Origin: Pristiophorus japonicus | Taxonomy: Eukaryota | DNA: 64,000 bases | Reading direction: 5' to 3' | NCBI RefSeq assembly: GCF_044704955.1 | Contig: NC_091984.1 | Location: 148,738,001-148,802,000 of the forward strand | Shown: positions 14,123-64,000 of the stretch, one piece after another | How the letters are laid out: every line of letters begins with the position of its first letter | How positions within the stretch are numbered: the stretch's first letter is position 1 | Made by a program: the position numbers and the translations under genes | Notes under the pieces: model-generated | Database searches by the model: none | What the model saw: the letters and a program-made list of their open reading frames with translations, nothing else | Told to the model about the DNA's origin: nothing

Positions 14123-15790
14123 TGTCGTGTATGGAGAAAGAATCAGACTGAACACTGTGAGCTCAAAGTAAAGTGTGACCTGAGTCTTTTATTGCAGGTC
14201 TCCAGAGCGCCTCTTCAACCTGTGAGGCCTCCTTAAATACCTGTGCTTCCAAGGGATTATGGGATCCCTTGGGACTCCAGGGGATGAGCCCTCTGGTGGC
14301 TGTACAGAGTAAATATAAATCCACATATATAACAACACTCCCCCGCCCCACCAAAGTCAATAGTGTAACTATTTACAATGTGAGACGATCTGGGGTCCTT
14401 CTTGCCCTGGTTGATCATCTCAGTGTGAAGGCTGGTGTTGTTGAATCATTTGTTGGGCCCTCGCTGGGCTGCTGTGCAGCTGGCTTTGCTGGGCTGCCTG
14501 GTGTGTTGGGCCCTGCTGGGCAGCTGTGGATGATGGGTTCTACTTCGTGATCAACTGTGGTGCCGGTTGCCACTGGTGTGTATGTTGGGGGATCAAAAAA
14601 GGTAGGGTCCAAGGTGGGTTGCTCAGGGTAGTCTGTTAATCTGTGTTTGATTTGGTCCAAGTGGTTCCGGTGAATGAGTCCATTTGAAAGTTTGACCCGA
14701 AACACCCTGCTCCACTCTTTGACCAGGACAGTGCCGGGAAGCCACTTGGGACCTTGTCCATAATTTAATACAAATACAGGATCATTGATTTCAATCTCAC
14801 GTGACACATTTGCGCTATCATGGTGTGCACTTTGTTGAAGCCGCCTGCTCTCTACCTGTTCATGTAGATCAGGGTGAACTAACGAGAGCCTTGTCTTAAG
14901 TGCTCTTTTCATGAGCAGTTCAGCAGGTGGGATCCCAGTAAGTGAGTGGGGTCTCGTGCGGTAGCTGAGCAGGACTCGGGATAGGCGAGTCTGCAGTGAG
15001 CCTTCAGTTACCCTCTTCAAGCCTTGCTTGATGGTTTGCACTGCTCTCTCTGCCTGACCATTGGACGCCGGTTTAAACGGGGCAGATGTGACATGTTTGA
15101 TCCCGTTATGGGTCATGAATTCTTTGAACTCAGCACTGGTAAAACATGGCCCGTTGTCGCTCACCAGGACATTGGGTGGGCCGTGTGTGGCAAACATGGC
15201 GAGCAGGCTTTCAGTGGTGGCAGCGGACGTGCTAGCCGACATTATCTCACATTCAATCCACTTGGAGTACGCGTCTACAACCACAAGGAACATTTTACCT
15301 GTCGACTTGTACCCTAGACCACGGTTTGGGGGCCAAGACCATAAACTTAGCAGCGCCTTCCTAGGTACATTTCTTAACTGCGAGCATGTATTATATCTGT
15401 GAACGCAGGACTTTAAGTCCGCATCGATACCGGGCCACCACACGTGGGATTTGGCTGTCGCTTTCATCATTACGATGCCTGAGTGGGTACTGTGGAGGTC
15501 ATTGATGAAGGTGTCTCTGCCCTTCTTGGGGACCACTACACGATTGCCCCACAGAAGGCAGTCTGCCTGTATAGACATTTCATCTTTGCGCCGCTGGAAC
15601 GGCTTTATCTCTTCCTGCATTTCCACTGGGACACTGGACCAGCTCCCGTGAAGCACACAGCTTTTGAATAGAGATAATAAGGGGTCCTGGCTTGTCCAGG
15701 TTTTGATCTGCTGGGCAGTGACGGGTGATCACTCACTCTCAAATGCTTCCATAACCATGCCTAGGTCTGCGGGCTGTGCCATTTCCATGA
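14123..15790 (-). mobile_element. Gypsy LTR retrotransposon 3' portion (integrase + 3' LTR 14123-14334), truncated at a CR1
   Basis: ORF 14415-15656: LHSTHSGIVMMK..VWWPGID, VDAYSKW, SDNGPCF, SNGQAERAVQ. A G-rich PPT lies next to a TG...CA LTR containing AATAAA. Confidence 0.92.
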
Positions 15791-18770
15791 GTAAAAGTGG
15801 AGGGCGGAGAAACCCAAGGCAAAAAACAAAAAGGGCCACTTTGCAGTAAAATTCTAAATGGTTAAAATGTGTTAAAAAGGCTAGCCTGAAGGCTCTGTGC
15901 CTCAATTCGAGGAGTATTCGGAATAAAGTGGACAAATTAACTGTGCAGAGAGCAGTTAACGGATACGATGTGGTTGGCATCACGGAGACATGGCTCCAGG
16001 GTGACCAAGGCTGGGAAGTCAACATCCAGGGGTATTCAGCATTTAGAAAGGATAGACAGAAAGGAAAAGGAGGCGGGGTGGCGTTGCTGGTTAAAGAAGA
16101 AGTTAATGCAATAGTGAGGAAAGACATTAGCTTGGATGATGTGGAATCGGTATGGGTGGAGCTACGGAATACCAAAGGGCAGAAAACGCTAGTGGGAGTT
16201 GTGTACAGACCTCTAAACAGTAGTAGTGATGTTGGGGAGGGCATCAAACAGGAAATTAGGGGTGCATGCAATAAAGGTGCAGCAGTTATCATAGGTGACT
16301 ATAATATGCATATAGATTGGGATAACCAAACTGCAAACAATACGGTGGAGGAGGATTTCCTGGAGTGCATAAGGAATGGTTTTCTAGACCAATATGTTGA
16401 GGAACCAACTCGGGGGGAGGCCATCTTAGACTGGGTGTTGTGTAATGCGAGAGGATTAATTAGCAAACATGTTGTGCGAAGCCCCTTGGGAAGAGTGACC
16501 TAATATGGTGGAATTCTACATTAGGATGGAGAATGAAACAGTTAATTCAGAGACCATGGTCCATAACTTAAAGAAGGGTAACTTTTAAGATATGAGGCAT
16601 GAATTGGCTAGGATAGATTGGCGAATGATACTTAAGGGGTTGACAGTGGATGGGCAATGGCAGACATTTAGAGACTGCATGGATGAATTACAACAATTGT
16701 ACATCCCTGTCTGGCGTAAAAATAAAAAAGGGAAGATGGCTATCAAGGGAAATCAGGGATAGTATTAAAGCCAAGGAAGTGGCATACAAATTGGCAGAAA
16801 TAGCAGCGAACCCGGGGACTGGGAGAAATTTAGAACTCAGCAGAGGAGGACAAAGGGTTTGATTAGGGCAGGGAAAATGGAGTACCAGAGAAAGCTTGCA
16901 GGGAACATTGAGATGGACTGCAAAAGCTTCTATAGATATGTAAAGAGAAAAAGGTTAGTAAAGACAAACGTAGGTCCCCTGCAGTCAGAATCAGGGGAAG
17001 TCATAACTGGGAACAAAGAAATGGCAGACCAATTGAACAAGTACTTTGGTTCGGTATTCACTAAGGAGGACACAAACAACCTTCCGGATATAAAAGGGGT
17101 CAGAGGATCTTGTAAGAAGGAGGAACTAAGGGAAATTCTTATTAGTCGGGAAATTGTGTTGGGGAAGTTGACGGGATTGAAGGCCGATAAATCCCCAGTA
17201 CCTGATGAACTGCATCCCAGAGTACTTAAGGAGGTGGCCTTGAAAATAGCGGATGCATTGACAGTCATTTTCCAACATTCCATTGACTCTGGATCAGTTC
17301 CTATGGAGTGGAGGGTAGCCAATGTAACCCCACTTTTTAAAAAAGGAGGGAGAGAGAAAACAGGGAATTATAGGCCGGTCAGTCTGACATCGGTAGTGGG
17401 TAAAATGATGGAATCAATTATTAAGGATGTCATAGCAGCGCATTTGGAAAGAGGTGACATGATAGGTCCAAGTCAGCATGGATTTGTGAAAGGGAAATCA
17501 TGCTTGACAAATCTTCTGGAATTTTTTGAGGATATTTCCAGTAGAGTGGATAAGGGGGAACCAGTTGATGTGGTATATTTGGACTTTCAGAAGACTTTCG
17601 ACCAGGTCCCACACAAGAGATTAATGTGCAAAGTTAAAGCACATGGGATTGGGGGTAGTGTGCTGAAGTGGATTGAGAACTGGTTGGCAGACAGGAAGCA
17701 AAGAGTAGGAGTAAATGGGTACTTTTCAGAATGGCAGGCAGTGACTAGTGGGGTAACGCAAGGTTCTGTGCTGGTGCCCCAGCTGTTTACATTGTACATT
17801 AATGAATTAGACGAGGGGATTAAATGTAGTATCTCCAAATTTGCGAATGACACTAAGTTGGGTGGCAGTGTGAGCTGCGAGGAGGATGCTGTAAGGCTGC
17901 AGAGTGACTTGGATATGTTAGGTGAGTGGGCAAATGCATGGCAGATGAAGTATAATGTGGATAAATGTGAGGTTATCCACTTTAGTAGTAAAAACAAAGA
18001 GACAGACTATTATCTGAATGGTGACAGATTAGGAAAAGGGGTGACCTGGGTGTCATGGTACATCAGTCATTGAAGGTTGGCATGCAGGTACAGCAGGTGG
18101 TTAAGAAAGCAAATGGCATGTTGGCCTTCATAGCGAGGGGATTTGAGTACAGGGTAGGGAGGTGTTACTATAGTTGTACAGGGCCTTGGTGAGGCCACAC
18201 CTGGAGTATTGTGTACAGTTTTGGTCTCCTAACTTGAGGAAGGACATTCTTGCTATTGAGGGAGTGCAGCGAAGGTTCACCAGACTGATTCCCGGGATGG
18301 CGGGACTGATATATCAAGAAAGACTGGATCAACTGGGCTTGTATTCACTGGAGTTCAGAAGAATGAGAGGGGATCTCATAGAAACGTTTAAAATTCTGAC
18401 GGGTTTGGACAGGTTAGATGCAGGATGAATGTTCCCAATTTTGGGGAAGTCCAGAACCAGGGGTCACAGTCTAAGGATAAGGGATAAGCCATTTAGGACC
18501 GAGATGAGGAGAAACTTCTTCACCCAGAGAGTGGTGAACCTGTGGGATTCTCTACCACAGAAAGTTGTTGAAGCCAATTCACTAAATATATTCAAAAAGG
18601 AGTTTGATGTAGTCCTTACTACTAGGGGGATCAAGGGGTATGGCGAGAAAGCAGGAATGGGGTACTGATGTTACATGTTCAGCCATTAACTCATTGAATG
18701 GCCATGCAGTATCGAAGGGCCGAATGGCCTACTCCTGCACCTATTTTTTATGTTTCTATTTTTCTATGCC
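15790..18770 (+). mobile_element. CR1-clade LINE, nearly complete ORF2 (APE + RT) with stops and frameshifts
   Basis: NSRSIRNK, ITETWL, GGGVALLV, NYRPVSLTS, LDFQKTFD, GVTQGSVL, KFANDTK, RPHLEYC; CR1 3' hairpin and tail. Confidence 0.95.
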
Positions 18771-22335: not shown

Positions 22336-25300
22336 TTGCAGGGCAGTTCTGCCCCATGGAGTGCCATGTGGGAAGTCCTGGACGCTTCTCGTGGCCTGGA
22401 CGACCACATGTGCAGGAAGTGTCACCAGCTACAGCAACTCGAGCTCCGCGTTTCAGAGATTGAGCGGGGGCTGGAGTCACTGCAGTGCATCCGCGAGGCT
22501 GAGAACTTCGTGGATAACACGTTTCTAGAGGTGGCCACCCGACAGCTTAAGAGTGTGCAGATAGAAAGGGAATGGGTGACCACCAGACAGAAGAGGAGGT
22601 CCAGGCAGGTAGTGCAGGTGCCATTATTGTGTTCTGAGTACTGGTGGGGGCGATGGTTCCTCGAGGAAATGCAGCCAAAGCCAAGTCCACGGCACCACGG
22701 GTGGCTCAGCTGCACAGGGGGGAGGAAGAAGAGTGGAAGAGCAATAGTGGTAGGGGATTCGATAGTTAGGGGAACAGACAGGCGTTTCTGCGGTCACAGA
22801 CGTGACTCTAGGATGGTATGTTGCCTGTCTGGTGCCAGGGTCAAGCATGTTACTGAGTGGCTGCAATACATTCTGAGGGGGGAGGGTGAACAACCAGATG
22901 TTGTGGTCCATATCGGTACCAATGACATAGGTAGAAAAAGGAATGAGGTCCTACAGGCAGAGTTAAGGGAGCTGGGAGAGAGATTAAAAAGCAAGACCTC
23001 AAAAATAGTAATCTCTGGATTACTCCCGGTGCCACGTGCTAGTGAGTACAGAAATAGGAGGATAGAGAAGATGAATGTGTGGCTGGAGAGATGGTGCAGG
23101 AGGGCTTTAGTTTCCTGAGGCATTGGGATTGTTTCTGGGGGAGATGGGACCTGTACAAGCTGGACGGGTTGCACCTCAACAGAACCGGGACCAATATCCT
23201 CATGGAGGGGGAGTTTGTTGTTGCTGTTGGGGAGGGTTTAAACTAGCTTGGCAGGGAATGGGAACCGGAAAATAGATTCAGTGGGGAGATAAGCAAAGCT
23301 GGAATTGGAAAGCAGAAAATTAGAAAGTGAATCTGGAAGACCGAGGAAACAAAGCCTAAAAAATAGACAGCAAGGCAGTTTGGCAGTGCTAAACGGCATA
23401 TACTCCAATGCAAGGAGTATGGGGAATAAGGCAAATGAGCTGAGAGCACAGATAGACATTTCTATACTCCTCTAAAGTTCCTGTATTATTGAGCCCTCGG
23501 TATCTATCATAAGCCTTCCTTTTTTACTTTATCCTACACTGTATTTCCCTTGACATCCAGGGGCCTCTAGATTTGTTAGCCCATCCTTTTTCTTTAAGGG
23601 AACAGACTTACTCTGAAACCACAGGATTTCCTCCTTGAATGCCTCCCACTGCTCTGACACTGATTTACCTTCAAGTAGTCGTTTCCAGTCCACTTTGGCC
23701 AAATCTCATCTCATTTCAGCAAAATTGGCTTTTCCCCAATTGAGAACTTTTATTCCTGGTCGATCTTTGTCCTTTTCCATAACTACCCTAAATCTAACTA
23801 AATTATGATCACTGGCACCAAAATGCTCTCCCACTGATACCCCTTCCACCTGCCCCTCTTCATTCCCCAAAACCAAGTCAGAAACGTCCCCTCCCTTGTT
23901 GGGCTTGTTACATACTGGCAAAAAATTTTATCCTGAATGCATTTTAGGAATTCCGCACCCTCTATACCTTTCACACTAATTTTATCCCAGTTAATATTAG
24001 GTATTTGAAATCTCTTACTATTGCTGCCCTATAGTTTTTGCACTTGTCAGAAATGTGCCTACATATTTGCTCTTCTCTCTCCCTCTGACTATTTCGGGGT
24101 CTATAGTACACTCCCAGCAGTGTGATTACCTCTTTTTCATTCTTCAATTCGACCTATATGGCCTCATTTGATGATCCTTCCGACATATCATCCCTCCTCA
24201 CAGCTGTAATTGTTTCTTTCAATTGTTTGAGGAGTATAGAAAGTGCAGGGTGCAATTAAAAAGGAAATTAGGAAAGCAAAGAGAGAGCATGAAAACATTT
24301 TGGCAAGTAAAATCAAGGAAAACCCAAAGAGGTTTTATAAATACATTAAGAGCAGGAGGATAATTAAAGAAAGAGTAGGGCCTATTAGAGACCATAAAGG
24401 TAATCTGTGTGTGGAGGTGTAAGACGTGGGTAGGATTGTTAATGAATAATTTGTGTCTGTTTTCACAAAAAGAGAGGGACAATGCAGACATTGCAATCAG
24501 GGAGGAGGAGTGTGAAATATTAGGTGAAATAAACATAGTGAGAGAGGAAGTATTAAGGGGCTTAGCAGCTTTGAAAGTGGATAAATCCCCAGGGCCTGAT
24601 CAAATGTATCCCACGCTGTTAAGAGAAGCAAAAGAGGAAATAGCAGAGGCTCGAACCATCAATTTTCAATCCTCTCTGTCTACAGGTGTGGTGATGGAGG
24701 ACTGGAGGGCTGTTAACATGGTACGTTTGTTTAAAAAGGGAGTCAGCCTCACCTCGGTGGTGGGAAAATTATTGGAAAAAATCCTGAGAGACTGGATAAA
24801 TCTTCATTTAGATAGACGGATTAATCAAGGACAGTCAGCATGGATTTCTTATGGGAAGGTCGTGTCTGACTAACTTAATTGAATTCAGCGAGGAAGTAAT
24901 AAGTAGGGTCGATGAGGACAGTTCGTATGATGTAGTGTATATGGATTTTAGCAAGACATTTGATAAGGTGCCACATTGCAGACTGATCACGAAAGTAAAA
25001 GCCTATCGGATCCAGAGCAAAGTGGCAAGTTGGATCCAAAATTGGCTCAGAGGCAGGAAGCAAAGGGTAATGGTTGATGGGTGTTTTTGTGACTGGAAGG
25101 CCATTTCCAGTGGGGTTCTGCAGGGCTCAGTACTAAGTCCCTTACTTTTTGTGGTACATATCAATGACTTAGACTTGAATGTAGGGGGTATGATTAAGAA
25201 GTTTGCAGATGATACTAAAATTGGCCATGTTGTTAATAATATAGAAAAAAGCTTCAGACTGCAGGAATATATCAATGGACTGGTCAGGTGGGCAGAACAG

Positions 25301-27174: not shown

Positions 27175-27765
27175 TCAATCCATTCTGATCTTGTACAGTC
27201 TCTCCATTTCCATTTCTTTAGTTTCATTACTCACTAGGCATATTATACCTTCAGGATTTCTTATTCTGGGAGTAATGCTTAGGAAGGGAGGCTGATGGTT
27301 ATTATCATAATTGGGCTGGTACCATCCCTGGAAGGCTGTGAGTTTATACCCTGCCGACCTCCATTCTGTTTGCTCCTTCGTTTCTGGCCCTTTAGTTAGT
27401 TTTGTCCTGTTTTGCACTGTCAACCATTCTACCATTTCTGATTCGTTAAAGGGGACAGATCTCAGGGGAATACCCCCCCTGGAGTGGACAGGTACATGGG
27501 AACATATCCAACAACTCGACAAGTTTCTTTCTTGAGCATACCTATGACTCAGTGCCATAAATACGTTTACGTGCAATTCCCTTCGGTGGTGGGTCTGTAC
27601 CCCTGGTGTAATCAATAATGCGAAGTAAAACCCTGTCAAGCCCAGCACCATCAGTCCCCATAGTCCATACAGTTCCTTATTCAGTCTTCCTTTTTCTGTT
27701 CCTCTGATTCCTTCGTCCCTTCCTCCTGGTCGGGTGCCCGTTTGCAATGGGATGCGTGGATCCAT
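27175..27765 (-). CDS. env: Truncated retroviral env (signal peptide + N-terminal SU)
   Basis: Hydrophobic LWGLMVLGLTGFYFALLI, then NLSSCWICSHVP (CWIC). Overlaps the pol 3' end; no TM subunit. Confidence 0.8.
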   Translation of the reverse strand: MDPRIPLQTGTRPGGRDEGIRGTEKGRLNKELYGLWGLMVLGLTGFYFALLITPGVQTHHRRELHVNVFMALSHRYAQERNLSSCWICSHVPVHSRGGIPLRSVPFNESEMVEWLTVQNRTKLTKGPETKEQTEWRSAGYKLTAFQGWYQPNYDNNHQPPFLSITPRIRNPEGIICLVSNETKEMEMERLYKIRMD

Positions 27766-29924
27766 GTTGGTCTTTCCTTTACCTTGATTGCAGTATTGGT
27801 CGCCAGCAGGACCTGGTATGGTCCTTCGAATCTTGGCTGTAGACTGCTTTTCCTTTTAAAAATCTTGATGTAAACGAATTCCCCTGGCTCCAGGTTATGA
27901 CACTTCCCTTCCGCTGGCTTGACTTGGGCTTCCTTTACCTGTGAATGAAAGCTGGAAATATATTTGGTTAGTGCAATACAATAATTCAACATATTTTCCT
28001 CCATTTTGTGGATGTCCATCTGTTTTGCAGTAAATTTACTTGCTGTAAAAGGTAGTCGTTGGGGACGTCCCATAACTATCTCATGTGGTGACAGGCCTGT
28101 TGTTCTGTTGGTTGCAGATCGCATTACCATCAAAGCTAAGGGCAGCAGTTCTGTCCATTTCAGTCCAGTGTCATTGCATAGTTTTGCCAGCTTATTTTTA
28201 AGCATTCCATTATATCTTTCAACAAGTCCAGCTGATTGTGGATGATAACTGCAATGAAAACGTTGATTAATCTGTAAAGCTTTACACATTTCTCTTATGA
28301 CAGTTCCCGTGAAATGTGACCCGTTATCACTGGAAAGCTTAGCAGGGATTCCGAAGCGCGGTACAATTTCTTTTAACAAACATTTAGCAACAGTAGTGGC
28401 ATCGGCCTTTTTACATGGAAAGGCTTCAATCCATCGAGAGAACACATCTACAATAACTAATACATACTTGAATCCCATACACATAGGTAATTCAATAAAA
28501 TCCATTTGTAAATGTACAAAAGGCCCGACTGGATTTGGGTGGGAGGCAGATTCTACTTTTTTCGTCTTACCCGGATTCATTGTCTGACAGGTAACACAAT
28601 TTTCACAGATTTGTTTTGCAATTGCCGAAATACCTGGTGCATACCAAGTTGCCAAAATATAATCTGCCAATCCCCCTTTGCCTGCATGTGTGAATGTATG
28701 AACACATCGGGCAATCCATGGAAGTAAGGATCTAGGGGCCACCACGCGGCCGTCATGGTGAACCCATATTCCTTCTGGATTTTTATAACATTGATCCTTC
28801 GTCCAGGTCACCACCTCCTCCGTACTGGCCTGTGTCTGAAAGGCCAGCACGTCATTAATAGTGGATGGCGGGTCTGAGCAATTATTTTTCCTTAGTGGGA
28901 ACAATGACACCTGCATCCCCCCTTTCGACAGAGCTGCTGACTTAGCTGCATTATCAGCTCTGGCATTCCCAAGTGCCACCTCATTCGACTGGCCTGTATG
29001 TGCTTGGCATTTGATAATGGCAAGTTTTAAGGGGCATTGAATGGCTCGCAGGAGATTTTCCACTTGTTCTGCATTTTTGATAGGGGTTCCTGAAGAAGTC
29101 AGGTACCCGCGAATCTTCCAAATTTGTCCATAGTCATGTGATACCCCAAAAGCATACCTGGAGTCAGTGTAGATATTAACTGTGTGTCCTTCAGCCAGAA
29201 TACAGGCTCGAGTTAACGCAAACAATTCGGCTTGTTGGGCTGAAAAGGAGTCTGGAAGAGAGGCTGTTTCGACAACATTAAACTGAGTTACAATTGCATA
29301 AGCCGCTCTAGGTTGGCCCCTATCATTTCGTAAGGCTGATCCGTCAACATAGTACACTAAATCAGGGTTACACATTGGTACATCTGTTAGATTGATACGT
29401 GGTTTAGTCACTAATTCGGTTACCATTTCACATGAATGGGGTTCGCCGTCGTCTTCCGTGGGGAGTAGAGTGGCTGGATTTAAGGTAGTACATCTTTTGA
29501 TGACAAGGTTCGGATTTGATAACAGTTCGACCTCGTATTTAGTGGTTCTTGCGGAGGTTAGGTGTTGGGTGGCACATTTAGTAAGTAAAATCTCGACAGA
29601 GTGTGGGATATACAAAATGGTCTGATGATTTAGAGTTATTGTCTGAGCCTGTTGCATAGCATAATAAGCTGCTGCCAACGAAGGAAGACATCCTGGTAGT
29701 CCGCGTGCCACTGGGTCTAGTTGGGTACTGAAATATGCTACCGGTCGCTGCCTGTCCCCATGTAACTGAGTCAAAACAGATTGTGCAAAACCCGACTTGT
29801 GATGCACAAATAAGTTGAATAGCTTAGTGTAATCTGGTAATTCCCAAGGCTGGTGCTGAAGTGAGGGACTGCTTAAGGTTCTGGAAAGCATTCCGGGATA
29901 CTTCATTCCACATCCTTTAAGCAT
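27681..29924 (-). CDS. pol: Uninterrupted pol C-terminal ORF: tether, RNase H and integrase
   Basis: RPVAYFS..LDPVARG, YYVDGSA, SAQQAELFAL, YTDSRYAFG, GNARAD, HTFTH..C..C, QMDFIEL, SDNGSHF, PQSAGLVE, FEGPYQVL. Confidence 0.93.
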   Translation of the reverse strand: MLKGCGMKYPGMLSRTLSSPSLQHQPWELPDYTKLFNLFVHHKSGFAQSVLTQLHGDRQRPVAYFSTQLDPVARGLPGCLPSLAAAYYAMQQAQTITLNHQTILYIPHSVEILLTKCATQHLTSARTTKYEVELLSNPNLVIKRCTTLNPATLLPTEDDGEPHSCEMVTELVTKPRINLTDVPMCNPDLVYYVDGSALRNDRGQPRAAYAIVTQFNVVETASLPDSFSAQQAELFALTRACILAEGHTVNIYTDSRYAFGVSHDYGQIWKIRGYLTSSGTPIKNAEQVENLLRAIQCPLKLAIIKCQAHTGQSNEVALGNARADNAAKSAALSKGGMQVSLFPLRKNNCSDPPSTINDVLAFQTQASTEEVVTWTKDQCYKNPEGIWVHHDGRVVAPRSLLPWIARCVHTFTHAGKGGLADYILATWYAPGISAIAKQICENCVTCQTMNPGKTKKVESASHPNPVGPFVHLQMDFIELPMCMGFKYVLVIVDVFSRWIEAFPCKKADATTVAKCLLKEIVPRFGIPAKLSSDNGSHFTGTVIREMCKALQINQRFHCSYHPQSAGLVERYNGMLKNKLAKLCNDTGLKWTELLPLALMVMRSATNRTTGLSPHEIVMGRPQRLPFTASKFTAKQMDIHKMEENMLNYCIALTKYISSFHSQVKEAQVKPAEGKCHNLEPGEFVYIKIFKRKSSLQPRFEGPYQVLLATNTAIKVKERPTWIHASHCKRAPDQEEGTKESEEQKKED

Positions 29925-39000: not shown

Positions 39001-42000
39001 AATGTAAGCCCTATGAGGCCAAATGAAAACGGGGAAATCGCAGGAAGCTGAAGTTCAGCGAGTTCATGTGGAGCACATATACAGTTCATACACCAGGACG
39101 CCACCGATAATGATGAAAGTACTCCTTAATGGCATCCCAGTATCAATGGACCTAGACAGGGGGGCCAGCCAGTCCCTGATGAATATCAAACAGTTCGACC
39201 AGCTGTGGGCATCCAAGGCCAGGAGGCCAAAATTATTGCCGATTGATGCACAGCTACGGATATATACAAAGGAGATCATTCCGGTGCGAGGCAGCGCCAC
39301 GGTAGTCATGACCCGCAAAGATTCGGAGAACAGATTGCCACTCTGGATTGTCCCGGGGGACGGTCCCGCACTAATGGGGAGGAGTTGGCTTGCTGTCATG
39401 AACTGGAAATGGGGCGATGTCAATGCAATTTCTTCTGTGGAGCAAGTATCATGCTCACAGATCCTGGACAAATTTGACTCATTGTTTCAAACCGGGATTG
39501 GCACTTTCATGGGGACCAAGGTAGTGATTCATATAAACTCGGACACCAGGCTAGTACACCTCAAGGCCAGAGCGGTGCCGTACGAGATACGGGAAAAGAT
39601 AGAAGGCGAATTGGACCGCCTGCTGAGGGAAGGTATCATCTCGCCAGAAGAATTCAGTGACTGGGCGAGCCCGATTGTGCTGGTGGTCAAGGCGGATGGG
39701 TCGGTCAGGATATGTGGCGATTGCAAGGCGACCATCAATCGGGTGTCACTCCAAGACCAGTACCCGCTACCGAGAGCAGAGGACCTCTTTGCGACGCTAT
39801 CAGGTGGCAAACTTTTTTCAAACTTGGACCTGACCTCAGCTTACATGACCCAGGAGCTGGCGAGTGAGTCGAAGAAGCTGACCACCATCACGACACACAA
39901 GGGATTGTTTGAGTATAACAGATGTCCATTTGGGATTCGCTCGGCCACCGCGATCTTTCAACGAAATATGGAAAGTCTCCTCAAGTCGATTCCAAGGACG
40001 GTGATTTTTCAAGACGACATCCTCATCACGGGTTGCGATACTGAAGAACACCTCCACAACCTTGAGGAGGTGCTACGCAGACTGGACCGGGTAGGGCTGC
40101 GACTGAAAAAGGCGAAGTTCGTCTTCCTAGCTCCAGAGGTAGAATTCCTGGGGATGAGGGTAGCAGCAGACGGGATCAGACCTATTGCATCCAAAACGGA
40201 AGTGATCCAGAGAGCACCCAGACCCCGTAACACGACGGAGCTGCGTTCATTCCTGGGGCTCCTGAACTACTTTGGTAACATTATTCCCAAATTGAGCATG
40301 CTGTTAGAGCCGCTACATGTGCTCCTACGCAAAGGTCGCGAATGGGTCTGGGGGGACAGCCAGGAAAGGGCTTTTGATAGAGCACGAAATTTGTTCTGCT
40401 CCAACAATCTGTTAACGTTATATGACCCATGTAAGAAACTTGTTTTAACGTGCGATGCGTCGTCCTATGGGGTAGGGTGTGTGTTGCAGCATGTTAAAGC
40501 CAAGAGTCAGTTACAGCTGGTAGCTTGTGCCTCCAGAAGTCTGTCCCAGGCAGAACGGGGCTACGGGATGGTAGAAAAGGAAGTGCTTGCATGTGTATAT
40601 GCAGTAAAAAAAATGCACCAGATCCTGTTTGGCAGGAAATTTGAGCTGGAGACAAATCACAAACCCCTAACGTCCCTTTTGGCCAACAAGAAGGCCATAA
40701 ATGCAAATGCATTGGCCCGCATACAGAGGTGGGCACTCACGTTAGCCGCCTATGACTATACAATTTGGCACAGACCGGGCACTGAAAACTGCACTCAGCA
40801 GGCTTCCACTTGCCACCACCGAGGGGACAACCGAGCATGCTGCTGAGATGCTCATGGCTGTTGAAGCTTTCGAAAACGAAGACTCACCTGTGACAGCCCG
40901 TCAGATCAAAGTCTGGACAAATAGAGACCCGCTACTGTCTTTTGTCAAGAAATGTGTCCTGAATGGGGACTGGGCAGCCACGTACGGGGCATGACCTGAG
41001 GAATTCAAACCATTTCACAGGCGCAAGGATGAACTCTCGATTCAGGCCGATTACCTACTATGGGGAAATCGAGTAGTCATGCCCCAGATGGGCAGAGAGA
41101 TGTTCATCAGAGAACTCCACAATGAGCACCCGGGCATTGTCATGATGAAGGCAATTGCCAGGTCACACGTTTGGTGGCCAGGGATAGATGCAGACCTGGA
41201 ACTTTGTGTTTGCAGGTGCAACACGTGTGCCCAGCTGGGCAATGCGCCCAGGGAAGCCCCCCTTAGCCCCTGGTCCTGGCCCGCCAAACCATGGTCACGC
41301 ATCCATGTGGACTATGCAGGTCCTTTCATGGGAAAAATGTTTTTGGTTGTAGTGGACGCCTACTCCAAATGGATCGAGTGTGACATTCTCAATTCAAGCA
41401 CATCCTCTGCCACGGTAGAACGTCTACGGGTAATGTTCGCCGCCCATGGTCTACCGGACGTCTTGGTCAGTGACAATGGCCCGTGCTTCACAAGCATTGA
41501 ATTCCAGGACTTCATGGCAGGAAATGGTATCAACCATGTCAGAACGGCACTGTTCAAGCCGCCCTCAAACAGCCAGGCGGAACTAGCAGTGCAGATAATC
41601 AAACAGGGGATGCTCAGAATCCAAGGGGGTTCCCTACAAAGCCGCTTATCACGCCTCCTGTTGGCCAATAGATTCCACCCGCAGTGCTGCTAATGAAAAG
41701 GATGCTCAAAACCAGGTTATCCCTTATACACCCTACTATGAAAGAAATTGTTGAGAGCAGGCGCCAGGCACAATGTGACTATCATGACGGAAATGCGAGG
41801 GCGTGATGTATTGATGTCAATGACTTTGTCTATGTCCTCAACTAAGCTGCAGGGCCTAAATGGCTTGCAGGCACTGTGATTGCCAAAGAGCGGAATAGGA
41901 TTCTGATAGTTAAATTTAACAATGGACAAATCTGCTGCAAAGACGTGGATCAAACAAAAAGAAGGTTCAGCAACCCCATAGAAGAAGCAGAGGAAGAACA

Positions 42001-43235: not shown

Positions 43236-43299
43236 ATTGAGGCAAAATCTGATATTCTGGATGTCGCCGCTCCTTTTAACGCACTCTCCAAAGCACACA

Positions 43300-45975
43300 C
43301 AGCAAATGCAACGCCCCTATTTAAAAAAGGAGGTAGACAGAAAGCAGGAAACGATAGACCAGTTAGCCTAACATCGGTCGTTGGGAAAATGCTGGAGTCC
43401 ATTATTAAGGAAGCAGTAGTAGGACATTTGGAAAAGCATAGTTCAATCAAGCAGAGTCAGCATGGTTTTATGAAAGGGAAATCATCTTTGACAAATTTTC
43501 TGGAATTCTTTGAGGATGTAACGAGCAGGGTGGATAAAGGGGAACCAGTGGATGTGGTGTATTTTGATTTCCAGAAGGCATTCGATAAGGTGCCACATAA
43601 AAAGCACAAGCTAAAAGTTCACGGGGTTGGGGATAATATATTAGCATGGATAGAGGATTGGCTAACTAACAGAAAACAGAGAGTCGAGATAAATGGGTCA
43701 TTTTCCCGTTGGAAAATGGTAACTAGTCTGGTGCCACAGGGATCGGTGCTGGGGCCTCATCTATTTACAATCTACATTAATTACTTAAATGAAGGGACTG
43801 AGCACAATGTAACCAAGTTTGCTGATGATACAATGAAGGACATTGAGCTATCCAACAAACACTGTTACACATTACACCAAATAAATGAAAAAGTAAGGGA
43901 GGAAATCGAGGAAATAATGGCCGCTCCACAATGGGATTTGGGATTCAATATTCAGATTCTCCCCTAGGTTCGAATGGTGTCTCACGTACTAGTTATTGTA
44001 CAGTTGGTTGTAGTGTTATAACTATTTATCTTGTTCTGTAAGTTAAAACAGAAAACAAAGGAAGGGAATATTGAAGGATTGTTAAGACAAAGCCAAAGTG
44101 TTTGTATGTAAACCTGAAGTCAGATCAAGGCCGAACATTTTTGTTGTAAAAGTGTTGGTTTGCCAGGAAAAAGTACTGTTTTTTGATGTAAAAAAGGAAT
44201 GTAATCTGGAATTTTTGACTGAGACTGCAATGCACCCAAATAGATCTCATGGAAAAAGAACAATTCCACAAGTAATGTCTCTAGTTTTATATTTACGAAA
44301 CATTAAAGGAGGGAGTGTAAGGTTACTAATCTTCAGAAAAGCACAGAAGGAGACCATGAACTAAAGATTAATACTAGCTTTTGGAATGTAATACAAGCTT
44401 TTGAAATGAAGCTGGACAATTAAGGACATTTTGGTCAGGAATCAAAACTGACTCCATGCATAACAAGAATGGAGTTGTTACGTGAGGCCCTGAACTTGAT
44501 TGACCAGGGTGGGGAAAACAAGCTCATTGGAGACACCAAGACTATAAAAAGACTGGACAACACCGGAACCACACCAGGTGTACATTTTCTGGGACGAGGT
44601 GTTAAGATGAGAAATCAACTTGAGTCTTGCAGACTCAGTGTGCAAATGGGAAAACAGATGAGTCCATTATTGCAGACAATCAACCAAGGGGACCAAAAAA
44701 CAATGTATAGATGCAAACACTTTATCAGAAACCGCAGTGGCGGGAGATCAATCATAACCTGGATATAAATATGTGAGCTAGAAGCAGCTCAGCAGAAGAC
44801 GGAAGAAGGACAGGAACAGACGGAAGAAGAAGCACACGTGTACAGGTGGACACAGGTCGAAAGAACGAACAGACGAATGGACGGAAAGACATGTTGTTCG
44901 GAACATACACAGAGGGAACAGCACTGCAGAGAACGGCCAGAAGAAGAACCAACCGGTCACAGAACCAACAACCACAAACCTACAATAGCTACAGCCGGGA
45001 AGGGCGATTGTATGTCTTCAGTCGATTTCTAAGAATCAGAGTGGAGAAAAAACAATCACCCTAGAATAAAAGATGGGTGGGAAAGCAAATTGTGAGGTGG
45101 ACACAAATAGTCTGCAAAGGGATATAGACAGGCTAAGTGAGTGGGCAAAAATTTGGCAGATGGAGTATAATGTGGGAAAATGTGAGGTTTTCCACTTTGG
45201 CAGAAAGAATAGAAAAGCAAATTAATTTTCAAATGGAGAAAGATTGCAACCTGCTGCAGTACAGAGGGACCTTGTGCATGAAACGGAAAAAGTTAGGATG
45301 CGGGTACAGCAATAATCAGGAAGGCAAATGGAATGTTGGCCTTTATTGCAAGGGAGATAGAGTATAAAAGCAGAGAATTCCTGCTACAACTGTACAGGGT
45401 ATTGGTGAGGACACACCTGGAGTACTGCATACAGTTTTGGTCACCATACTTAAGAAAAGATAGACCTGCATTGGAGGCAGTTCAGAGAAGGTTCACTAGG
45501 TTGATTCTGGAGATGAGGGGGTTGACTTATGAGGATAGGTTGAGTAGGTTAGGCCTACAATCATTGGCATTCAGAAGAATGAGAGGTGATTTTATTGAAA
45601 CATATAAGATAATGAGGGGGCGACAAGGTGGATGCAGTGAGGATATTTACACTCATAGGAGAAAATAGTACTAGGGGTCATAGTCTCAGAATAAGGGGCT
45701 GTCAATTTAAAACTCAGTTGAGGAGGAATTTCTTCTCTCAGAGGCTTGTAAATCTGTGGACTTCTCTGCCCCAGAGAGCTGTATAGGCTGGGTCATTGAA
45801 TATATTTAAGGTGGAGATAGACAGATTTTTGAGCGATAAGGAAATAAAGGGTTATGGGGAGCAGGCAGGGAAGTGGAGCTGAGTCCATGATCAGATCAGC
45901 CATGATCTTATTAAATGGCGGAGCAGGCTCGAGGTCCCAGGTGGCCGACTCCTGCTCCTATTTCTGATGTTCTTA
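43300..45975 (+). mobile_element. CR1 RT/3' fragment split by a ~1.2-kb insertion (43834-~45068)
   Basis: [16 protein letters not shown] at 43389-43833 resumes as (K)MGGKAN at ~45070; CR1 tail at ~45960. Confidence 0.88.
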
Positions 45976-57734: not shown

Positions 57735-58078
57735 CTCCCACTGGTCCTCCAATAGAGCCCAGGAAACATGGCTCCTTTCTATTGGTCCCACAATAGGGCC
57801 CAGGAATTATGGCTCTTCCTATTAGTCCTCCACTAGGACCCAGGCAACATGGTGCCGTCCTATTGGTCCTCCAATAGGGACCATGAAACATGGCTTCTTC
57901 CTATTGGTCCTCCAATCGGGAGCATGAAACATGGCTACTTCCTATTGGTGCCCAATAGGGACAAGGAAACATTGTTCCTTCCTATTGGTCCTCCAATAGG
58001 GACCAGGAAACATGACTCTTTCCTATTGATCCTCCAGTCGGCACCAGGAAACATGTCTCCTTCCTATTTGTCCGATTG
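57735..58078. repeat. ~41-bp tandem array with internal palindrome
   Basis: About 8 copies of TTCCTATTGGTCCTCCAATAGGGACCAGGAAACATGGCTCC. Confidence 0.9.
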
Positions 58079-58959: not shown

Positions 58960-61542
58960 GGGTTGGAACTTAACACAATCACAATCACTAAGGAGGTGGT
59001 ACTCAGTAAGATAATGGGACTAAAGGCAGATAAATCCCCTGGACTTAATGGCTTGCATCCTAGGGTCTTAAGAGAAGTAACATCTCGGCCTTTTGGCTAA
59101 GATCATGTGTAACTGACCTGACAGGGGAGTAACCACCATAACCCAAGGTGGTTCTCCCTGGATCAGGAAGGTATATGCTTGCTTTTTTGGAAATAGGAGG
59201 TGGGTGGGGTGGCTTGACCCATCCACCTCCATGGCACGAACCTGGTATTGCAGTACTTCCAGGAACGGTGCAGTGGCTCTAGGCCTTTTGGCTAAGAGCA
59301 TTGGCGCAGAGTGATCCTTGAATGGGCCCAAGGTGACCTCTGGCGTTTGTGAGTTGACAAAGAATTGGAACGATTGGCTACGAATTTCAAAAAAAAAAAC
59401 AGCAGGGATACTGGATGCATTGGTTGTAATTTACCAAAATTCCCTGGATTCTGGGGAGGTCCCAGCAGATTGGAAAACTGCAAATGTAATGCTGCTATTT
59501 AAAAAAGGAGGCAGACAAAAATCAGGAAACTATAGACCATTTAGCCTAACATCTGTGGTTGGGAAAATGTTGGAGTCCATTATTAAACAAGCAGTAGCAG
59601 AACATTGGGAAAAGCATAATTCAGTCAGGCAGAGTTAGCATGGATTTATGAAGGGGAAGTCAAGTTTGACAAATTTTCTGGAATTCTTTGAGGATGTAAC
59701 GAGCAGGGTGGATAAAGGGGAACTAGTGGATGTTGTGTATTTGGACTTCCAGAAGGCATTGACAAGGTGTCACATAAATGGTTACTGTACAAGGTAAAAT
59801 TCACAGTGTTGGGGGTAATATATTAGAATGGATAGAGGATTGGCTAACGAACAGAAAACAGAGAGTCGGGATTAATGGTTAATTCTCGTTTTGGCAATCA
59901 GTAACTAGTGGGGTGCTGCTGGATCTCCAACTATTTACAATCTATATTAACGACTTGGAAGAAGGAATCGAGTGTAACGTAGCTGAGTTTGCTGATGATA
60001 CAAAGATGGGAGGAAAAGCAATGTGTGAGGAGGACACAAAAAACCTCCAAAAAGGACATAGACAGGCGAAGTGAGTGGGCAAAAATTTGGCAGATGGAGT
60101 ATAATGTTGGAATGTGTGAGGTTATGCACATTGGCAGAAAAAATCGAAGAGCAAGTTATTAGTTAAATGGAGAAAAATTGCAAAGTGCTGCAGTACAGCG
60201 GGACCTGGGGGTCCTGGTGCATGAAACACAAAAGGTTAGTGTGCAGGTACAGCAAGTGATCAGGAAGGCCAATGGAACCTTGGCCTTTATTGCAAAGTGG
60301 GTGGAGTATAAAAGCAGGGAAGTCTTGCTACAGTTATGCAGGGTATTGATGAGGCCACACCTAGAATACTGCGTACAGTTTTGGTTTCCATATTTACGAA
60401 AGGATACACTTGCCTTGGAGGCCGTTCAGAGAAGGTTCATTTGGTTGATTCTGGGGATGAGGAAAGGTTGTGTAGATTGGGCCTCTACTCATTGGAATTC
60501 AGAAGATGAGAGATGATCTTATCGAAACAAGGTGGATACAAAGAGGATGTTTCCACTGATAGGGGAGACTAGATCTACAGGGCATAATATTAGAATAAGG
60601 TGCCCTCCATTTAAAACTGAGATGAGGTGGAATTTATTCTCTCGGGATCTCTAATCTCTAATTATTCTCTAATCTCTGGATTACTCCAGTGCCATGAGCC
60701 AGTGAGCACAGAAACAGGAGGATAGAGCAGACGAATACATGCCTGGAGAGATGGTGCAGGCAGGAGGGCTTTAGTTTCCTGAGGTATTGGGACCATTTCA
60801 GGGGGAGGTGGAACCTGGACAAGCCGGACGGGTTGCACCTCAACAGAGCCGGGACCAATATCATCGCGGCGGGGAGGGTTTGTTTGTGCTGTTGGGGAGG
60901 CTTTAAACTAGCTGGGCAGGGGGCTGGGAACCTGAAAATAGATTCAGTAGGGAGGGGAGTAAAGCTGGAATTAGAAAGCAAAAATAAAGTGAGTTTGAAG
61001 GAGAGAGGAAACGAGCGGAAAAAAGGTTAAAAAACAAATTTAAAGGCTCTTTGTCTAAATGTATGTAGCATTCGTAACAAAATAGATGAGTTGACGGCAC
61101 AAATAGATACAAATGGGTATGATCTGTAGCCATTACAGAGACATGGTTGCAAAGTGACCAGGACTGGGAACTAAATATTCAGGGGTACTTGACAATCTGG
61201 AAGGACAGACAGAAATGAAAAGGAGGTGGGGTAGCTCTGTTGATAAAGGATGGAATCACTGCAATAGTGAGAAATTATATTGGCTCAAATGATCAGGATG
61301 TTGAAACAGTTTGTGTGGAGATACAGAATAATAAAGGGAAAAAGCCACTGGTGGGTGTAGTCTATAGGCTCCCGAACAGTAGCACCTCTGCTGGTCGGAG
61401 AATAAACCAGGAAATAGTGGAGGCTTGTGAAAAGGGAACAGCAATAATCATGGGTGATTTTAACCTCCACATTGATTGGACAAATCAAATTGGTCAGGGT
61501 AGCGTTGACGAAGAGTTCAAAGAGTGCATAAGGAACGGGTTC
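58960..61542 (+). mobile_element. Degenerate CR1 pieces (RT/3' part 58960-60650; ORF1 end + endonuclease 60670-61542)
   Basis: DKSPG..GLHPRVLREV, NYRPFSLTS, RPHLEYC; DGLHLNRAG, ITETWL, MGDFN. A minus-strand CR1 3' piece lies at 58080-58440. Confidence 0.88.
59083..59399 (+). mobile_element. Poly(A)-tailed chimeric U2/U1 snRNA-derived retroposon (SINEU-like)
   Basis: 59083-59105 equals U2 nt 7-29 exactly. 59112-59167 is U1 5' end/SL-I-like. 59183-59272 is the U2 Sm-like U-tract, SL-III and SL-IV. 59276-59300 is a second U2 SL-I. A11 tail; interrupts a CR1 RT. Confidence 0.85.
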
Positions 61543-64000
61543 TGTTGGTGTATTGCTCTGGTGCATTAAATGTATGATAAGTACAATGGTGCACCACAGA
61601 GGGCGTTGTGGTGGGAGACCTGGAAGTACCTGCACAAGGCAGTATAAAAGGCTGCCCACCACACCTGTGGAGCACTCTGGAGCTGTTCAATAAAGGACTA
61701 AGGTCACAGCAGTTAGATTTACACCAGACCGTGTGGAGTCAGTGATTTGTGTGCTACATACACCACATTGGCGACAAGGAAGCGGACGAATTCCACGCAA
61801 CCATGGCTACTCTGGGCTCGCTAAAGGATTTTACCGTGGGCAATGATTGGGAGGCCTTTACGGAAAGGCTCGAGTACTACTTCACAGCAAACGATCTGGC
61901 GGAGGACACGAATGCACTGAGAGAGAAGCGTAAGACGATATTGTTTTCCAGTTGTGGCGATGAGGTTTTCTGTCTCATCAGGGATTTGCTGGCACCTGGG
62001 AGCGCCAGGGACAAGTCATACGAGGAGCTGACTGAACTTATTCATGACCAGTTGAAACCGAAGGAGAGCATCCTCATGGCCAGATTCAAATTTTACCACC
62101 ACTGCAGACCCGAGGGCCAGGATGTCACCAAATATGCTGCAGACCTCAGGAGACTCGCGGCGCCGTGTGATTTTGGGGCACACCTTGATGAGGCGCTGTG
62201 GGACGTTTTCGTTATGGGGATTGGACATGAGGGCCTCCTTCACAAGCTGCTGGCCACGGAACCCACAGTCACTCTGACAAAGGCCATCACCATCAGCCGG
62301 GCATATATGACCTCGACTTGTAGCACCAAGCAAATAATCCACACAGTCTCGAACCCGGCAGGCACTGTCCACAGGATAGCGCCCACCATGGACAAAACTG
62401 CAGAACGTGGCTCTGCCCAGGGCAGAGAGCACAGACCTCGGGGTCCTGGAACTCAGAGTCCGCTGAGGGGGGCCAATCAAGCAGCACCATGCTGGTGCTG
62501 CAGAGAAAGCCATGGGGCTCACCGGTGCAGGTTTGTGGAGTACACATGCAATACCTGCCACATTAAAGGCCATCTTCAGTGTATGTGTAAAAGAAATCAG
62601 ACTCACCGTGTGGCTGGGGAGACGGGGGATGATCCACTGTTCAGTGAGGAGCAGGCAGAAGAAGATGAGGTGTTGGGACTGTATACGTGCACCGACGATT
62701 CTCCCCCAGTGATAATGGAAGTAAAAATTGATGGAGTCCCAGTGAGTGTGGCAGTGGATACGGGATTGGTTCCGTCGTTGATGAGTCAGAGAACTTTTGA
62801 TAAACTGTGGGGTAACCCGGCTGCACGATCCAAGCTGGTCCCGGTCACGGCAAAGCTGCATACTTACACCAAGGAACTGGTACCTGTTCTCGGCAGAACG
62901 GATGTACAGGTATCTCACAGGGGCGAGTTGCACGGTTTACCTTTATGGGTCATTGCAGGCGATGGGCCGACGTTCCTCGGCAGAAGATGGATGGGTAAGG
63001 TCCGTGGGAGCTGGGAAGACTTCTTCACTCTCCCACAGACTGCTGCTCCCTGGTTTCCAAAGGGCAGTGGCAACCGAGCTGGAGCTGCAGCAGCAGCCCA
63101 GAACTCCTGGCCCCAAGCAATCCTGCAGCCTCAGCTACAGGTGCGGGCCCATTGCTGGGGTGCGGGCTGGCGGGGCGCTGCGGTCCAGCGGTGGCCGGGT
63201 AACCCACGCAGTGGAACAAGCGGGCGGCAGCAGCGGCCGCGATGGTGGCGGCCATGGAGCCAGCAGGAGAGGCGGCCACGGAGCCAGCAGGAGAGGCGGC
63301 CACGGAGGGAGCTGTAACGAAACATCGCGCCGAGTTTGAGAGCGCCAGCATCGAGTAAGTCCAGCATCAGCGCCAGAGGAAGAGGATCGTGGACAAATGC
63401 CTGAAACCTTTCCCCAAAATTCCCTCTCCCCACCTTCTATATTTCCCTTTCCCTCCTTCCGTGTTTCTTCTTTTTTCTCGGCCAGCTGAACACCTAAGAT
63501 GGCGGCGCCCAACGGAAGCCTCGTGGGAGCCACAAGATGGCTTCTTAAAAGGGAAATGCTCCCTGGCGTCTTAAAAGGGCCTCACACCACTGCGGTCCCC
63601 ACATAAAGACTTTTGGACTTTTGTAAGATTAGAGCAAGCCTAAGTGTGCCATGTGAATGTAGGATGATGGATTTATGACAAGAAATAATATTTTAATGCT
63701 GGGTGGTCACTGTGTTTAAAATAATAGACGTGAATTGCGAATTACGACAAGAGTTAATATTTCAATGCTAATGGTCACTGTGTTTAAATTCAGGGACGTG
63801 GATCCGTGACCAACATTACCAATGGGCTAATGCATTTTTCGATTCGGGGATTCTAGCAAAGGCTTTTTGAACTGGGAGCGCAGTGATGTTGTGTGTTGCT
63901 CTGGTACATTAAACATATGATAAGTACAATGGTGCACCACAGAAGGCGCTGTGGTGGGAGACCTGGAAGTACATGCACGAGGTATAAAAGGCTGCCCATC
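61543..64000 (+). mobile_element. Short Gypsy element with gag-protease only; 5' LTR 61543-61767, 3' LTR from 63887 (cut by window edge)
   Basis: TG...CA LTR with TATAAAA and AATAAA, PBS TGGCGACAAG. The LTR sequence recurs at 63887. No RT/IN motifs between the LTRs. Confidence 0.92.
61803..63317 (+). CDS. gag: Gypsy Gag-protease ORF
   Basis: MATLGSLKDF..DWEAFTERLEYYF, two zinc-knuckle-like motifs (CNTCHIKGHLQCMC), VAVDTG and FLGRRWM protease motifs; no internal stop. Confidence 0.85.
   Translation: MATLGSLKDFTVGNDWEAFTERLEYYFTANDLAEDTNALREKRKTILFSSCGDEVFCLIRDLLAPGSARDKSYEELTELIHDQLKPKESILMARFKFYHHCRPEGQDVTKYAADLRRLAAPCDFGAHLDEALWDVFVMGIGHEGLLHKLLATEPTVTLTKAITISRAYMTSTCSTKQIIHTVSNPAGTVHRIAPTMDKTAERGSAQGREHRPRGPGTQSPLRGANQAAPCWCCRESHGAHRCRFVEYTCNTCHIKGHLQCMCKRNQTHRVAGETGDDPLFSEEQAEEDEVLGLYTCTDDSPPVIMEVKIDGVPVSVAVDTGLVPSLMSQRTFDKLWGNPAARSKLVPVTAKLHTYTKELVPVLGRTDVQVSHRGELHGLPLWVIAGDGPTFLGRRWMGKVRGSWEDFFTLPQTAAPWFPKGSGNRAGAAAAAQNSWPQAILQPQLQVRAHCWGAGWRGAAVQRWPGNPRSGTSGRQQRPRWWRPWSQQERRPRSQQERRPRREL

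What the first reader, a model, noticed from the sequence alone, without database searches (positions are those of the whole stretch)
59083..59399. U2-U1-U2 chimeric snRNA retroposon with preserved stems
Seen: the ~317-bp insert splits a CR1 RT sequence, ends in A11 and has a possible short TSD (AACA). Its order is: U2 nt 7-35; a U1-like 5' end (ACTGACCTGACAGGGGAG...AAGGTGGTTCTCCC) placed where U2's branch-point-pairing GUAGUA and SL-II should be; a U-tract; U2 SL-III and SL-IV (loop TATTGCAGTAC intact); a second U2 SL-I; then ~90 nt of unknown tail. The diverged parts still pair: AACCACC/GGTGGTT with GGGAG/CTCCC and CCTGA/TCAGG, GGAGGTGGGTGGG/CCCATCCACCTCC, and GCTCT/AGAGC. Known: U1/U2-derived SINEs (SINEU) are described in crocodilians, and Keno/Utopia LINEs target U2. 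Inference: random pseudogene decay would not keep these stems, so the source RNA was probably structurally constrained. It may be an undescribed shark SINEU family, or a hybrid snRNA able to bind snRNP proteins.
Basis: partly seen in the sequence, partly recalled or inferred. Interest (0 to 1): 0.85.

Follow-up and report, generated by a model that had tools for sequence, protein, structure and literature searches.

The report
Shark retroposon built from U2/U1 pieces
A 316-base poly(A)-tailed mobile-element copy stitched together from pieces of the U2 and U1 spliceosomal RNAs sits inside a CR1-like LINE; it is a dead retroposed copy of a SINEU-type element, a design published only for crocodilians, not a working RNA gene.

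Summary
Rfam finds a full-length U2 match at 59077-59278 (68.8 bits, cut-off 46). Searched alone, 59110-59180 matches the 5' end and stem-loop I of U1 (E = 9e-4). A second U2 stem-loop I follows at 59278-59297, then an 88-nt tail with no Rfam match and an A-run. An uninterrupted CR1-like copy in the same window shows that codon ACA is duplicated at the insertion, so this is a clean retroposition.

My reading is one copy of a SINEU-like snRNA-mosaic retroposon. This scan has noted the same design at 13 or more other places in this genome, and two were followed up. Those notes are unchecked by me.

One new hint: the 12 bases upstream of the nick match U2 nt 27-38 at 9 of 12, in register with the Keno/Utopia cut site (38|39). 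The outer U2 piece ends at nt 35. This suggests a U2-site-directed partner LINE, at about 35-40% odds.

A working hybrid snRNA is unlikely.

The parts
59068..59079 (+). Target DNA just upstream of the inferred first-strand nick, TTAAGAGAAGTA; resembles U2 nt 27-38
   Evidence: 9/12 identical, ungapped, in register with the Keno/Utopia cut 38|39. Background rate of 9/12 or better in this window is 4.3e-4 per position and strand. Cut site taken from PMC4640811.
59080..59082 (+). Left copy of the target-site duplication, ACA (AACA if 59079 is counted)
   Evidence: Reading-frame comparison with the uninterrupted LINE copy at 17123-17460.
59083..59111 (+). U2 snRNA nt 7-35: stem-loop I and the start of the branch-point box, ending 3 nt before the Keno/Utopia site
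   Evidence: cmscan U2 alignment; hairpin in the fold.
59112..59167 (+). U1 snRNA nt ~3-56: 5' splice-site-pairing end (one change, ACUGACCUG) plus stem-loop I, replacing U2 nt 36-~82
   Evidence: RF00003 positions 1-73, 19.9 bits, E = 9e-4. The fold gives 5 + 7 bp plus a CCUGA/UCAGG extension.
59168..59195 (+). U2 single-stranded region with an Sm-site-like CUUUUUUGG; the T6 at 59183-59188 would stop RNA polymerase III
   Evidence: cmscan U2 alignment; sequence.
59196..59230 (+). U2 stem-loop III, remodelled into an unbroken 13-bp stem with a 9-nt loop
59231..59277 (+). U2 stem-loop IV and 3' end.
59278..59300 (+). Second, inner U2 fragment, nt 7-29 (stem-loop I), starting at the same U2 base as the outer one
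   Evidence: U2 model 7-26, 14.5 bits; 22/24 identical to 59083-59106; GCUCU/AGAGC extended stem.
59301..59388 (+). Unique 3' tail, origin unknown; holds an imperfect ~14-bp hairpin
   Evidence: No Rfam family at E up to 10; no similarity elsewhere in the window; fold z = -1.5.
59389..59398 (+). Poly(A) tail, A10 (A9 if the TSD is AACA)
   Evidence: Sequence.
59399..59401 (+). Right copy of the target-site duplication, ACA
58960..59660 (+). Host: decayed CR1/L2-type LINE reverse-transcriptase region, split by the insert, same orientation
   Evidence: Translated flanks match LINE RT copies at 17123-17460, 43299-43462, 24520 and 50766. The 17-kb copy carries Pfam RVT_1.

Best explanation
This is one retroposed, non-functional copy of a SINEU-like non-autonomous retroposon of an elasmobranch-type genome. 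Shown: its RNA was a mosaic of U2(7-35) - U1(~3-56) - U2(~83 to 3' end) - U2(7-29) - unique 88-nt tail - poly(A). It was integrated by target-primed reverse transcription into a CR1-like LINE, leaving a 3-4 bp target duplication. Inferred from the layering: the oldest unit was a short U2 head plus the tail, as in crocodilian SINEU-1J. A U2 3' part was then joined almost end to end onto its 5' end. That part had been recombined with U1 (from my memory of the human sequences, at a shared CGAGG). Finally an outer U2(1-35) head was added. Inferred, about 35-40% odds: the partner LINE is a poly(A)-type, U2-site-directed Tx1/Keno-like element. Master copies would then sit in U2 genes at the nt 38|39 site and be transcribed from the external U2 promoter. 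That would explain a head that stops at nt 35, how an element with no internal promoter and an internal T6 gets transcribed, and why this copy landed at a U2-like sequence in a LINE.
For: U2, U1 and second-U2 modules by covariance models. Internal duplicate 22/24. Exact insertion boundaries and duplicated ACA codon from an uninterrupted LINE copy. A-tail and T6. The design matches Kojima 2015 (PMC4494074): snRNA heads, unique 3' part, poly(A), repeated 5' additions of U1/U2, oligo-T arguing against pol III. Keno and Utopia cut U2 at 38|39 (PMC4640811). The outer U2 piece ends at nt 35. The 12 nt upstream of the nick match U2 27-38 at 9/12, background 4.3e-4 per position. Leads only, not tested by me: 13 or more notes of the same mosaic at other places of this genome in 251 windows, two of them followed up (one as two tandem copies inside a CR1 LINE), and two notes of nested insertions at the U2 target site.
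Against: I saw only this one copy. None other lies in the 64 kb, and every route to other copies failed, so family status rests on unchecked notes. For the Keno-like part: the register needs the TSD to be ACA, and with AACA the match is 2/12. I noticed the match post hoc. By my own count, downstream of the nick only 2 of 7 bases match U2. The inner U2 fragment ends at nt 29, not 35-38. No Tx1/Keno LINE or shared 3' tail was found in the window.
Confidence: 0.72

Rival explanations
1. Same family, different way of building and transcribing it. All U1/U2 pieces were added by reverse-transcriptase template jumps onto the 5' end of an existing element (Kojima's model for SINEU). Transcription comes from whatever promoter lies upstream of a master copy. 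The partner LINE has no U2-site preference, and the U2-like target here is chance.
For: The inner junction joins a U2 3' end almost directly to the 5' end of the next U2 piece, as end-to-end jumping predicts. Kojima documents many independent 5' additions. Both U2 pieces begin at nt 7, which fits a reverse transcriptase stopping short of the 5' end. The 9/12 target match was noticed post hoc.
Against: A jump from the 5' end of U1 into the interior of U2, at the known LINE cut site (nt 35 against 38|39), is not what end-to-end jumping predicts. The target match is in register with the nick at a background rate of 4e-4. Unchecked notes report nested insertions at the U2 site.
Confidence: 0.4
2. 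A one-off chimeric retropseudogene, made in a single LINE retrotransposition event by several template switches between a polyadenylated RNA, U2 and U1 (Buzdin / Garcia-Perez type). It would not be a propagating family.
For: No second copy in the window. Short homologies at the junctions (UA at U2/U1; CGAGG at U1/U2, from my memory of the human sequences). snRNA-containing chimeras are known.
Against: It needs four switches in one event, two of them into internal positions. At least 13 notes, two followed up, describe the same module order elsewhere in this genome (unchecked by me).
Confidence: 0.08
3. A retrocopy of a functional hybrid U2/U1 snRNA that assembles with Sm and U2A'/U2B'' proteins, with stems kept by selection.
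For: Stem-loops I, III and IV, the U-tract and the stem-loop IV loop are intact. The left part folds far better than shuffles (z = -4.9). Several differences from the Rfam consensus keep or extend pairing.
Against: The element carries an extra U2 hairpin, an 88-nt non-snRNA tail and poly(A), which no snRNA has. The branch-point box and stem-loops IIa/IIb are absent. About half of the ten U1 loop positions differ from the consensus. The Sm-site A is a C. This copy has no promoter. No covariation test was possible.
Confidence: 0.05
4. A plain decayed U2 retropseudogene whose middle resembles U1 only by chance.
For: In the 2.5-kb search only U2 was reported.
Against: Searched alone, the segment's best hit among 4227 families is U1, from model position 1, E = 9e-4, with stem-loop I pairing kept. 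The U2 model has to skip it as a 34-nt insertion.
Confidence: 0.02

Closest known systems
SINEU-1 of crocodilians (Kojima 2015, PMC4494074)
   Same: Short poly(A)-tailed non-autonomous retroposon. The oldest layer is a short U2-derived head on a unique 3' part that matches no known LINE. Later subfamilies were made by repeated 5' additions of U1- and U2-derived pieces and partial duplications. Internal oligo-T argues against pol III.
   Different: Different host lineage (elasmobranch-type genome against crocodilians). Here U1 sits inside a U2 in place of stem-loop II. Sequence relatedness of the 3' parts was not testable, and independent origin is likely. The crocodilian families prefer Mariner-N4_AMi; this copy is in a CR1-like LINE at a U2-like site.
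SINEU-2 and SINEU-3 of crocodilians
   Same: SINEU-2 is a 5' U1 piece joined to a 3' U2 piece, the same order as 59112-59277. SINEU-3 is a U2 with an internal ~50-bp deletion (5' 32 bp plus middle 83 bp), close to the breakpoints here (nt 35 and ~83).
   Different: Here the deleted U2 middle is filled by U1, and an extra U2 hairpin plus tail follows.
Keno (Tx1 clade) and Utopia, U2-gene-targeting non-LTR retrotransposons (PMC4640811)
   Same: They cut U2 between nt 38 and 39. The outer U2 head here stops at nt 35, and the target DNA matches U2 27-38 at 9/12 in register. Some crocodilian Tx1 relatives of Keno carry U1 or U2 heads.
   Different: This element has no ORF. No Keno-like LINE or shared 3' tail was found, so the link is an inference.
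L1-mediated snRNA chimeric retropseudogenes (Buzdin 2002; Garcia-Perez 2007, as cited in PMC4494074)
   Same: An snRNA piece joined 5' to another RNA, with poly(A) and TSD, made by template switching.
   Different: Those are independent one-off events with one junction. This has four junctions and, by the scan's notes, recurs with the same order.

Membership tests
SINEU (snRNA-headed SINEs, Kojima 2015) | 5' region derived from U1 or U2 snRNA | tested here: met
   U2 at 68.8 bits; U1 positions 1-73 at E = 9e-4.
SINEU (snRNA-headed SINEs, Kojima 2015) | Short (<500 bp), non-coding, 3' poly(A), inserted by retroposition | tested here: met
   316-bp insert, A10, duplicated ACA at an otherwise intact LINE site.
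SINEU (snRNA-headed SINEs, Kojima 2015) | A propagating multi-copy family with shared junctions, not independent chimeras | not testable with these tools
   No other copy in the window. Searches blank. Only unchecked scan notes of 13 or more similar elements.
SINEU (snRNA-headed SINEs, Kojima 2015) | No pol III promoter; internal oligo-T | tested here: met
   T6 at 59183-59188 and two T4 runs. No tRNA, 7SL or 5S match.
SINEU (snRNA-headed SINEs, Kojima 2015) | Common descent with the crocodilian SINEU-1/2/3 consensus sequences | not testable with these tools
   No Repbase or Dfam sequences on hand.
Elements mobilised by U2-site-specific LINEs (Keno/Utopia type) | Insertion at, or at a look-alike of, U2 nt 38|39 | tested here: inconclusive
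   9/12 match to U2 27-38 in register if the TSD is ACA, 2/12 if AACA. One site only.
Elements mobilised by U2-site-specific LINEs (Keno/Utopia type) | 3' tail shared with the partner LINE | not testable with these tools
   No matching LINE 3' end in the window and no Tx1/Keno sequences on hand.
Functional U2 snRNA gene | Branch-point recognition box GUAGUA and stem-loops IIa/IIb | tested here: not met
   GUAGUA is cut to GUA and nt 36-~82 are replaced by U1 sequence.
Functional U1 snRNA gene | Full four-stem U1 with Sm site, reaching the Rfam gathering score | tested here: not met
   Only positions 1-73 align, at 19.9 bits against a cut-off of 69.5.

The most novel reading that the evidence does not exclude
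The family is driven by a Keno-like, U2-site-directed LINE. Its master copies would sit inside U2 genes at nt 38|39 and borrow the external U2 promoter, so each round of re-insertion and co-transcription adds another U2(1-35) head. That would answer the question Kojima left open, how SINEU elements are transcribed, and explain why snRNA heads pile up. It would also show the same solution arising independently in sharks and crocodilians.
Probability: 0.3. Interest if true: 0.7.

Novelty: new member of a known kind. Interest (0 to 1): 0.5.

Why it matters
SINEU is the only SINE class whose heads come from pol II-transcribed snRNAs. The 2015 description found it only in crocodilians and left open how such elements are transcribed and which LINE moves them. 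A second, apparently independent family in a cartilaginous fish would show that the design is recurrent. If the copies are young and numerous, their insertion sites, master copies and partner LINE can be read straight from the genome. The U2-like target seen here gives a concrete, checkable prediction. For annotation, these copies will be called U2 genes by Rfam-based pipelines (68.8 bits, above gathering) and should be masked as repeats.

Tried and rejected
So there is no depth, no copy number, no expression data and no look at related species. Folds, scripts and searches used 59083-59238 and 59275-59399 only.

2. Finding other copies through spurious ORFs: the 52-aa open frame on the minus strand of 59083-59238 had no candidate in the protein collection. 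The 45-aa LINE fragment that reads into the element (58963-59097) also had none. That collection evidently lacks such short shark ORFs, so these blanks say nothing.

3. DNA pattern scans: the 20-mer across the U2/U1 junction hit one metagenome contig (L001) that shares nothing beyond the 20-mer. A 20-mer from the tail hit three bacterial MAG contigs with about 13-23% flank identity, about the number expected by chance. A stem-loop III 29-mer had no hit in viral contigs.

4. Tail origin: no Rfam family at E up to 10. Note s1-874793 calls the tail U6-like. From memory, the 12-mer AATTGGAACGAT equals U6 nt ~33-44, but the U6 model did not report it, so I do not claim it.

5. CpG content as an age clue: too few sites to mean anything.

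7. Literature: no paper in the held library describes SINEU or U1/U2-derived SINEs in cartilaginous fishes. Repbase and Dfam could not be searched.

Full report
**What is there**

Window 59083-59398 is a 316-bp insert in the + orientation (sequence).

- **U2.** Rfam's U2 model (RF00004) aligns end to end over 59077-59278 at 68.8 bits, against a gathering score of 46. It is the only gathering-level RNA family hit in the whole 64 kb.
- **True start of U2.** The first six aligned bases are host flank, so the U2 sequence starts at nt 7 (59083) and runs unchanged in length to nt 35 (59111).
- **The skipped segment.** The U2 model then has to skip a 34-nt insertion. It resumes with the Sm-site region, stem-loop III, stem-loop IV and the 3' end.
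- **U1.** Searched alone, 59110-59180 has U1 (RF00003) as its best hit among 4227 families. The match covers model positions 1-73 at 19.9 bits, E = 9e-4, and 10 of the 11 stem-loop I pairs are standard.
- **Second U2 hairpin.** Directly after the U2 3' end comes a second U2 nt 7-26/29 at 59278-59300. It is 22/24 identical to the first.
- **Tail.** An 88-nt tail follows with no Rfam match and no similarity elsewhere in the window. Then comes the A-run.

**Insertion site**

The flanks translate as ...LHPRVLREVT and TAGILDALVVIYQNSLDSG.... An uninterrupted, related LINE copy at 17123-17460 (Pfam RVT_1) reads ...LHPRVLKEV-ALK-IADAL.... There are three residues between V and I in both, so exactly one ACA codon is duplicated. 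The TSD is ACA, or AACA if one more A is counted. Nothing of the host was lost. This is a clean target-primed retroposition into a decayed CR1/L2-type LINE, and this copy has no snRNA promoter.

**Structure**

RNA 59083-59238 folds into U2 stem-loop I, the U1 stem-loop I with a CCUGA/UCAGG extension, and an unbroken 13-bp stem-loop III. The energy is -71.3 kcal/mol, z = -4.9, and none of 200 shuffles folds as well. The part from the second hairpin to the end of the tail is unremarkable (z = -1.5).

Whether they are kept by selection cannot be decided from one copy. I had neither other copies nor the species' own U1 and U2. Several features argue against a working particle:

- the branch-point box and stem-loops IIa/IIb are gone;
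- about half of the ten U1 loop positions differ from the consensus;
- the A that opens the Sm site in the consensus is a C.

**Layers**

Reading from the 3' end, the layers are: tail plus A; short U2 head (nt 7-29); U2 from about nt 83 to its 3' end; U1 nt ~3-56; and U2 nt 7-35.

The junction between the U2 3' end and the inner U2 head is nearly end to end. From my memory of the human sequences, the U1/U2 junction lies in a shared CGAGG and the U2/U1 junction in a shared UA. These are memory-based and not tool results.

This layering is the design Kojima described for crocodilian SINEU (PMC4494074):

- SINEU-1J is a short U2 head on a unique 3' part.
- Younger subfamilies arose by repeated 5' additions of U1 and U2.
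- SINEU-2 is U1 followed by U2.
- SINEU-3 is an internally deleted U2.
- All have poly(A) and internal oligo-T.

Here a T6 at 59183-59188 likewise argues against pol III.

**Is it a family?**

I could not show this myself.

- There is no second copy in the window.
- All listed runs are kept as contigs.
From then on I sent none of those letters to any search tool.
- Two protein searches meant to catch ORFs called across other copies were blank.
- Three DNA pattern scans gave only chance hits or none.

The scan's own notebook lists at least 13 other notes of U2/U1 mosaic poly(A) retroposons of about 300-375 letters in this genome, among 251 windows. Two were followed up by other agents, one as two tandem copies inside a CR1 LINE. 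Two notes report nested insertions at the U2 target site. These are unchecked leads. They raise my odds for a multi-copy family to about 0.8, but they are not my evidence.

**A new hint on the mechanism**

Keno (Tx1 clade, poly(A) type) and Utopia both cut U2 between nt 38 and 39 (PMC4640811). Two features here fit that site.

1. The outermost U2 head stops at nt 35.
2. With the TSD taken as ACA, the 12 bases upstream of the first-strand nick (59068-59079) match U2 nt 27-38 at 9 of 12 without gaps, in register with the cut. Such a match occurs at 4.3e-4 of positions in this window.

The caveats are real. The register fails if the TSD is AACA (2/12). By my own count the downstream side does not match. 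The inner U2 head ends at nt 29. I looked for the match after reading the paper. It is one site only.

If it holds, the partner is a U2-site-directed LINE. Master copies could then lie in U2 genes and be co-transcribed from the U2 promoter, which would explain both the head and the missing promoter. I give this 35-40%. The main alternative is Kojima's template-jump model with unrelated promoters.

**Comparison and verdict**

The element works like a SINEU and meets the features I could test: snRNA head, short, poly(A), TSD, no pol III signals. Family status, shared descent with the crocodilian families and the partner LINE were not testable.

The 2015 paper found no SINEU outside crocodilians, and I found no later report for cartilaginous fishes in the held library. 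Repbase and Dfam could not be checked.

I rate it a new member of a known kind, of moderate interest.

Noticed in passing
window 57742-58073: Tandem array of about 8 copies of a 41-bp unit (80% matches), about 1 kb upstream of the element and just 5' of the LINE fragment.
   Followed up: no
window 27681-29924 (-): Intact 747-aa ORF with RNase H, integrase core and MLV-type integrase C-terminal domains: the pol end of a gammaretrovirus-like endogenous provirus. Observed only.
   Followed up: no
window 61749-63317 (+): 522-aa ORF with no Pfam hit, but with a CCHC-like zinc knuckle and a protease-like VDTG motif in the translation. It is probably the gag-protease of an LTR retrotransposon. It ends in a 24-bp tandem repeat at 63247-63307.
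   Followed up: partly
window 39023-40846 (+), 14415-15656 (-), 5283-7201 (-): Further LTR-retrotransposon pol fragments (RVT_1, RT_RNaseH, rve). The window is almost wholly transposon-derived.
   Followed up: no
window 22336-23118 (+): 260-aa ORF with a GDSL-lipase/OSK-like esterase domain, as in ORF1 of CR1/L2-type LINEs of fishes.
   Followed up: no
window 59113-59117: The single change in the U1 5' end (ACUUACCUG to ACUGACCUG) creates CUGAC, which reads like a vertebrate branch-site consensus. Note s1-874923 remarks on the same thing at another copy. It cannot be told from chance here.
   Followed up: no
window 59362-59373: The tail 12-mer AATTGGAACGAT equals, from memory, U6 snRNA nt ~33-44, but the Rfam U6 model reports nothing.
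   Followed up: partly
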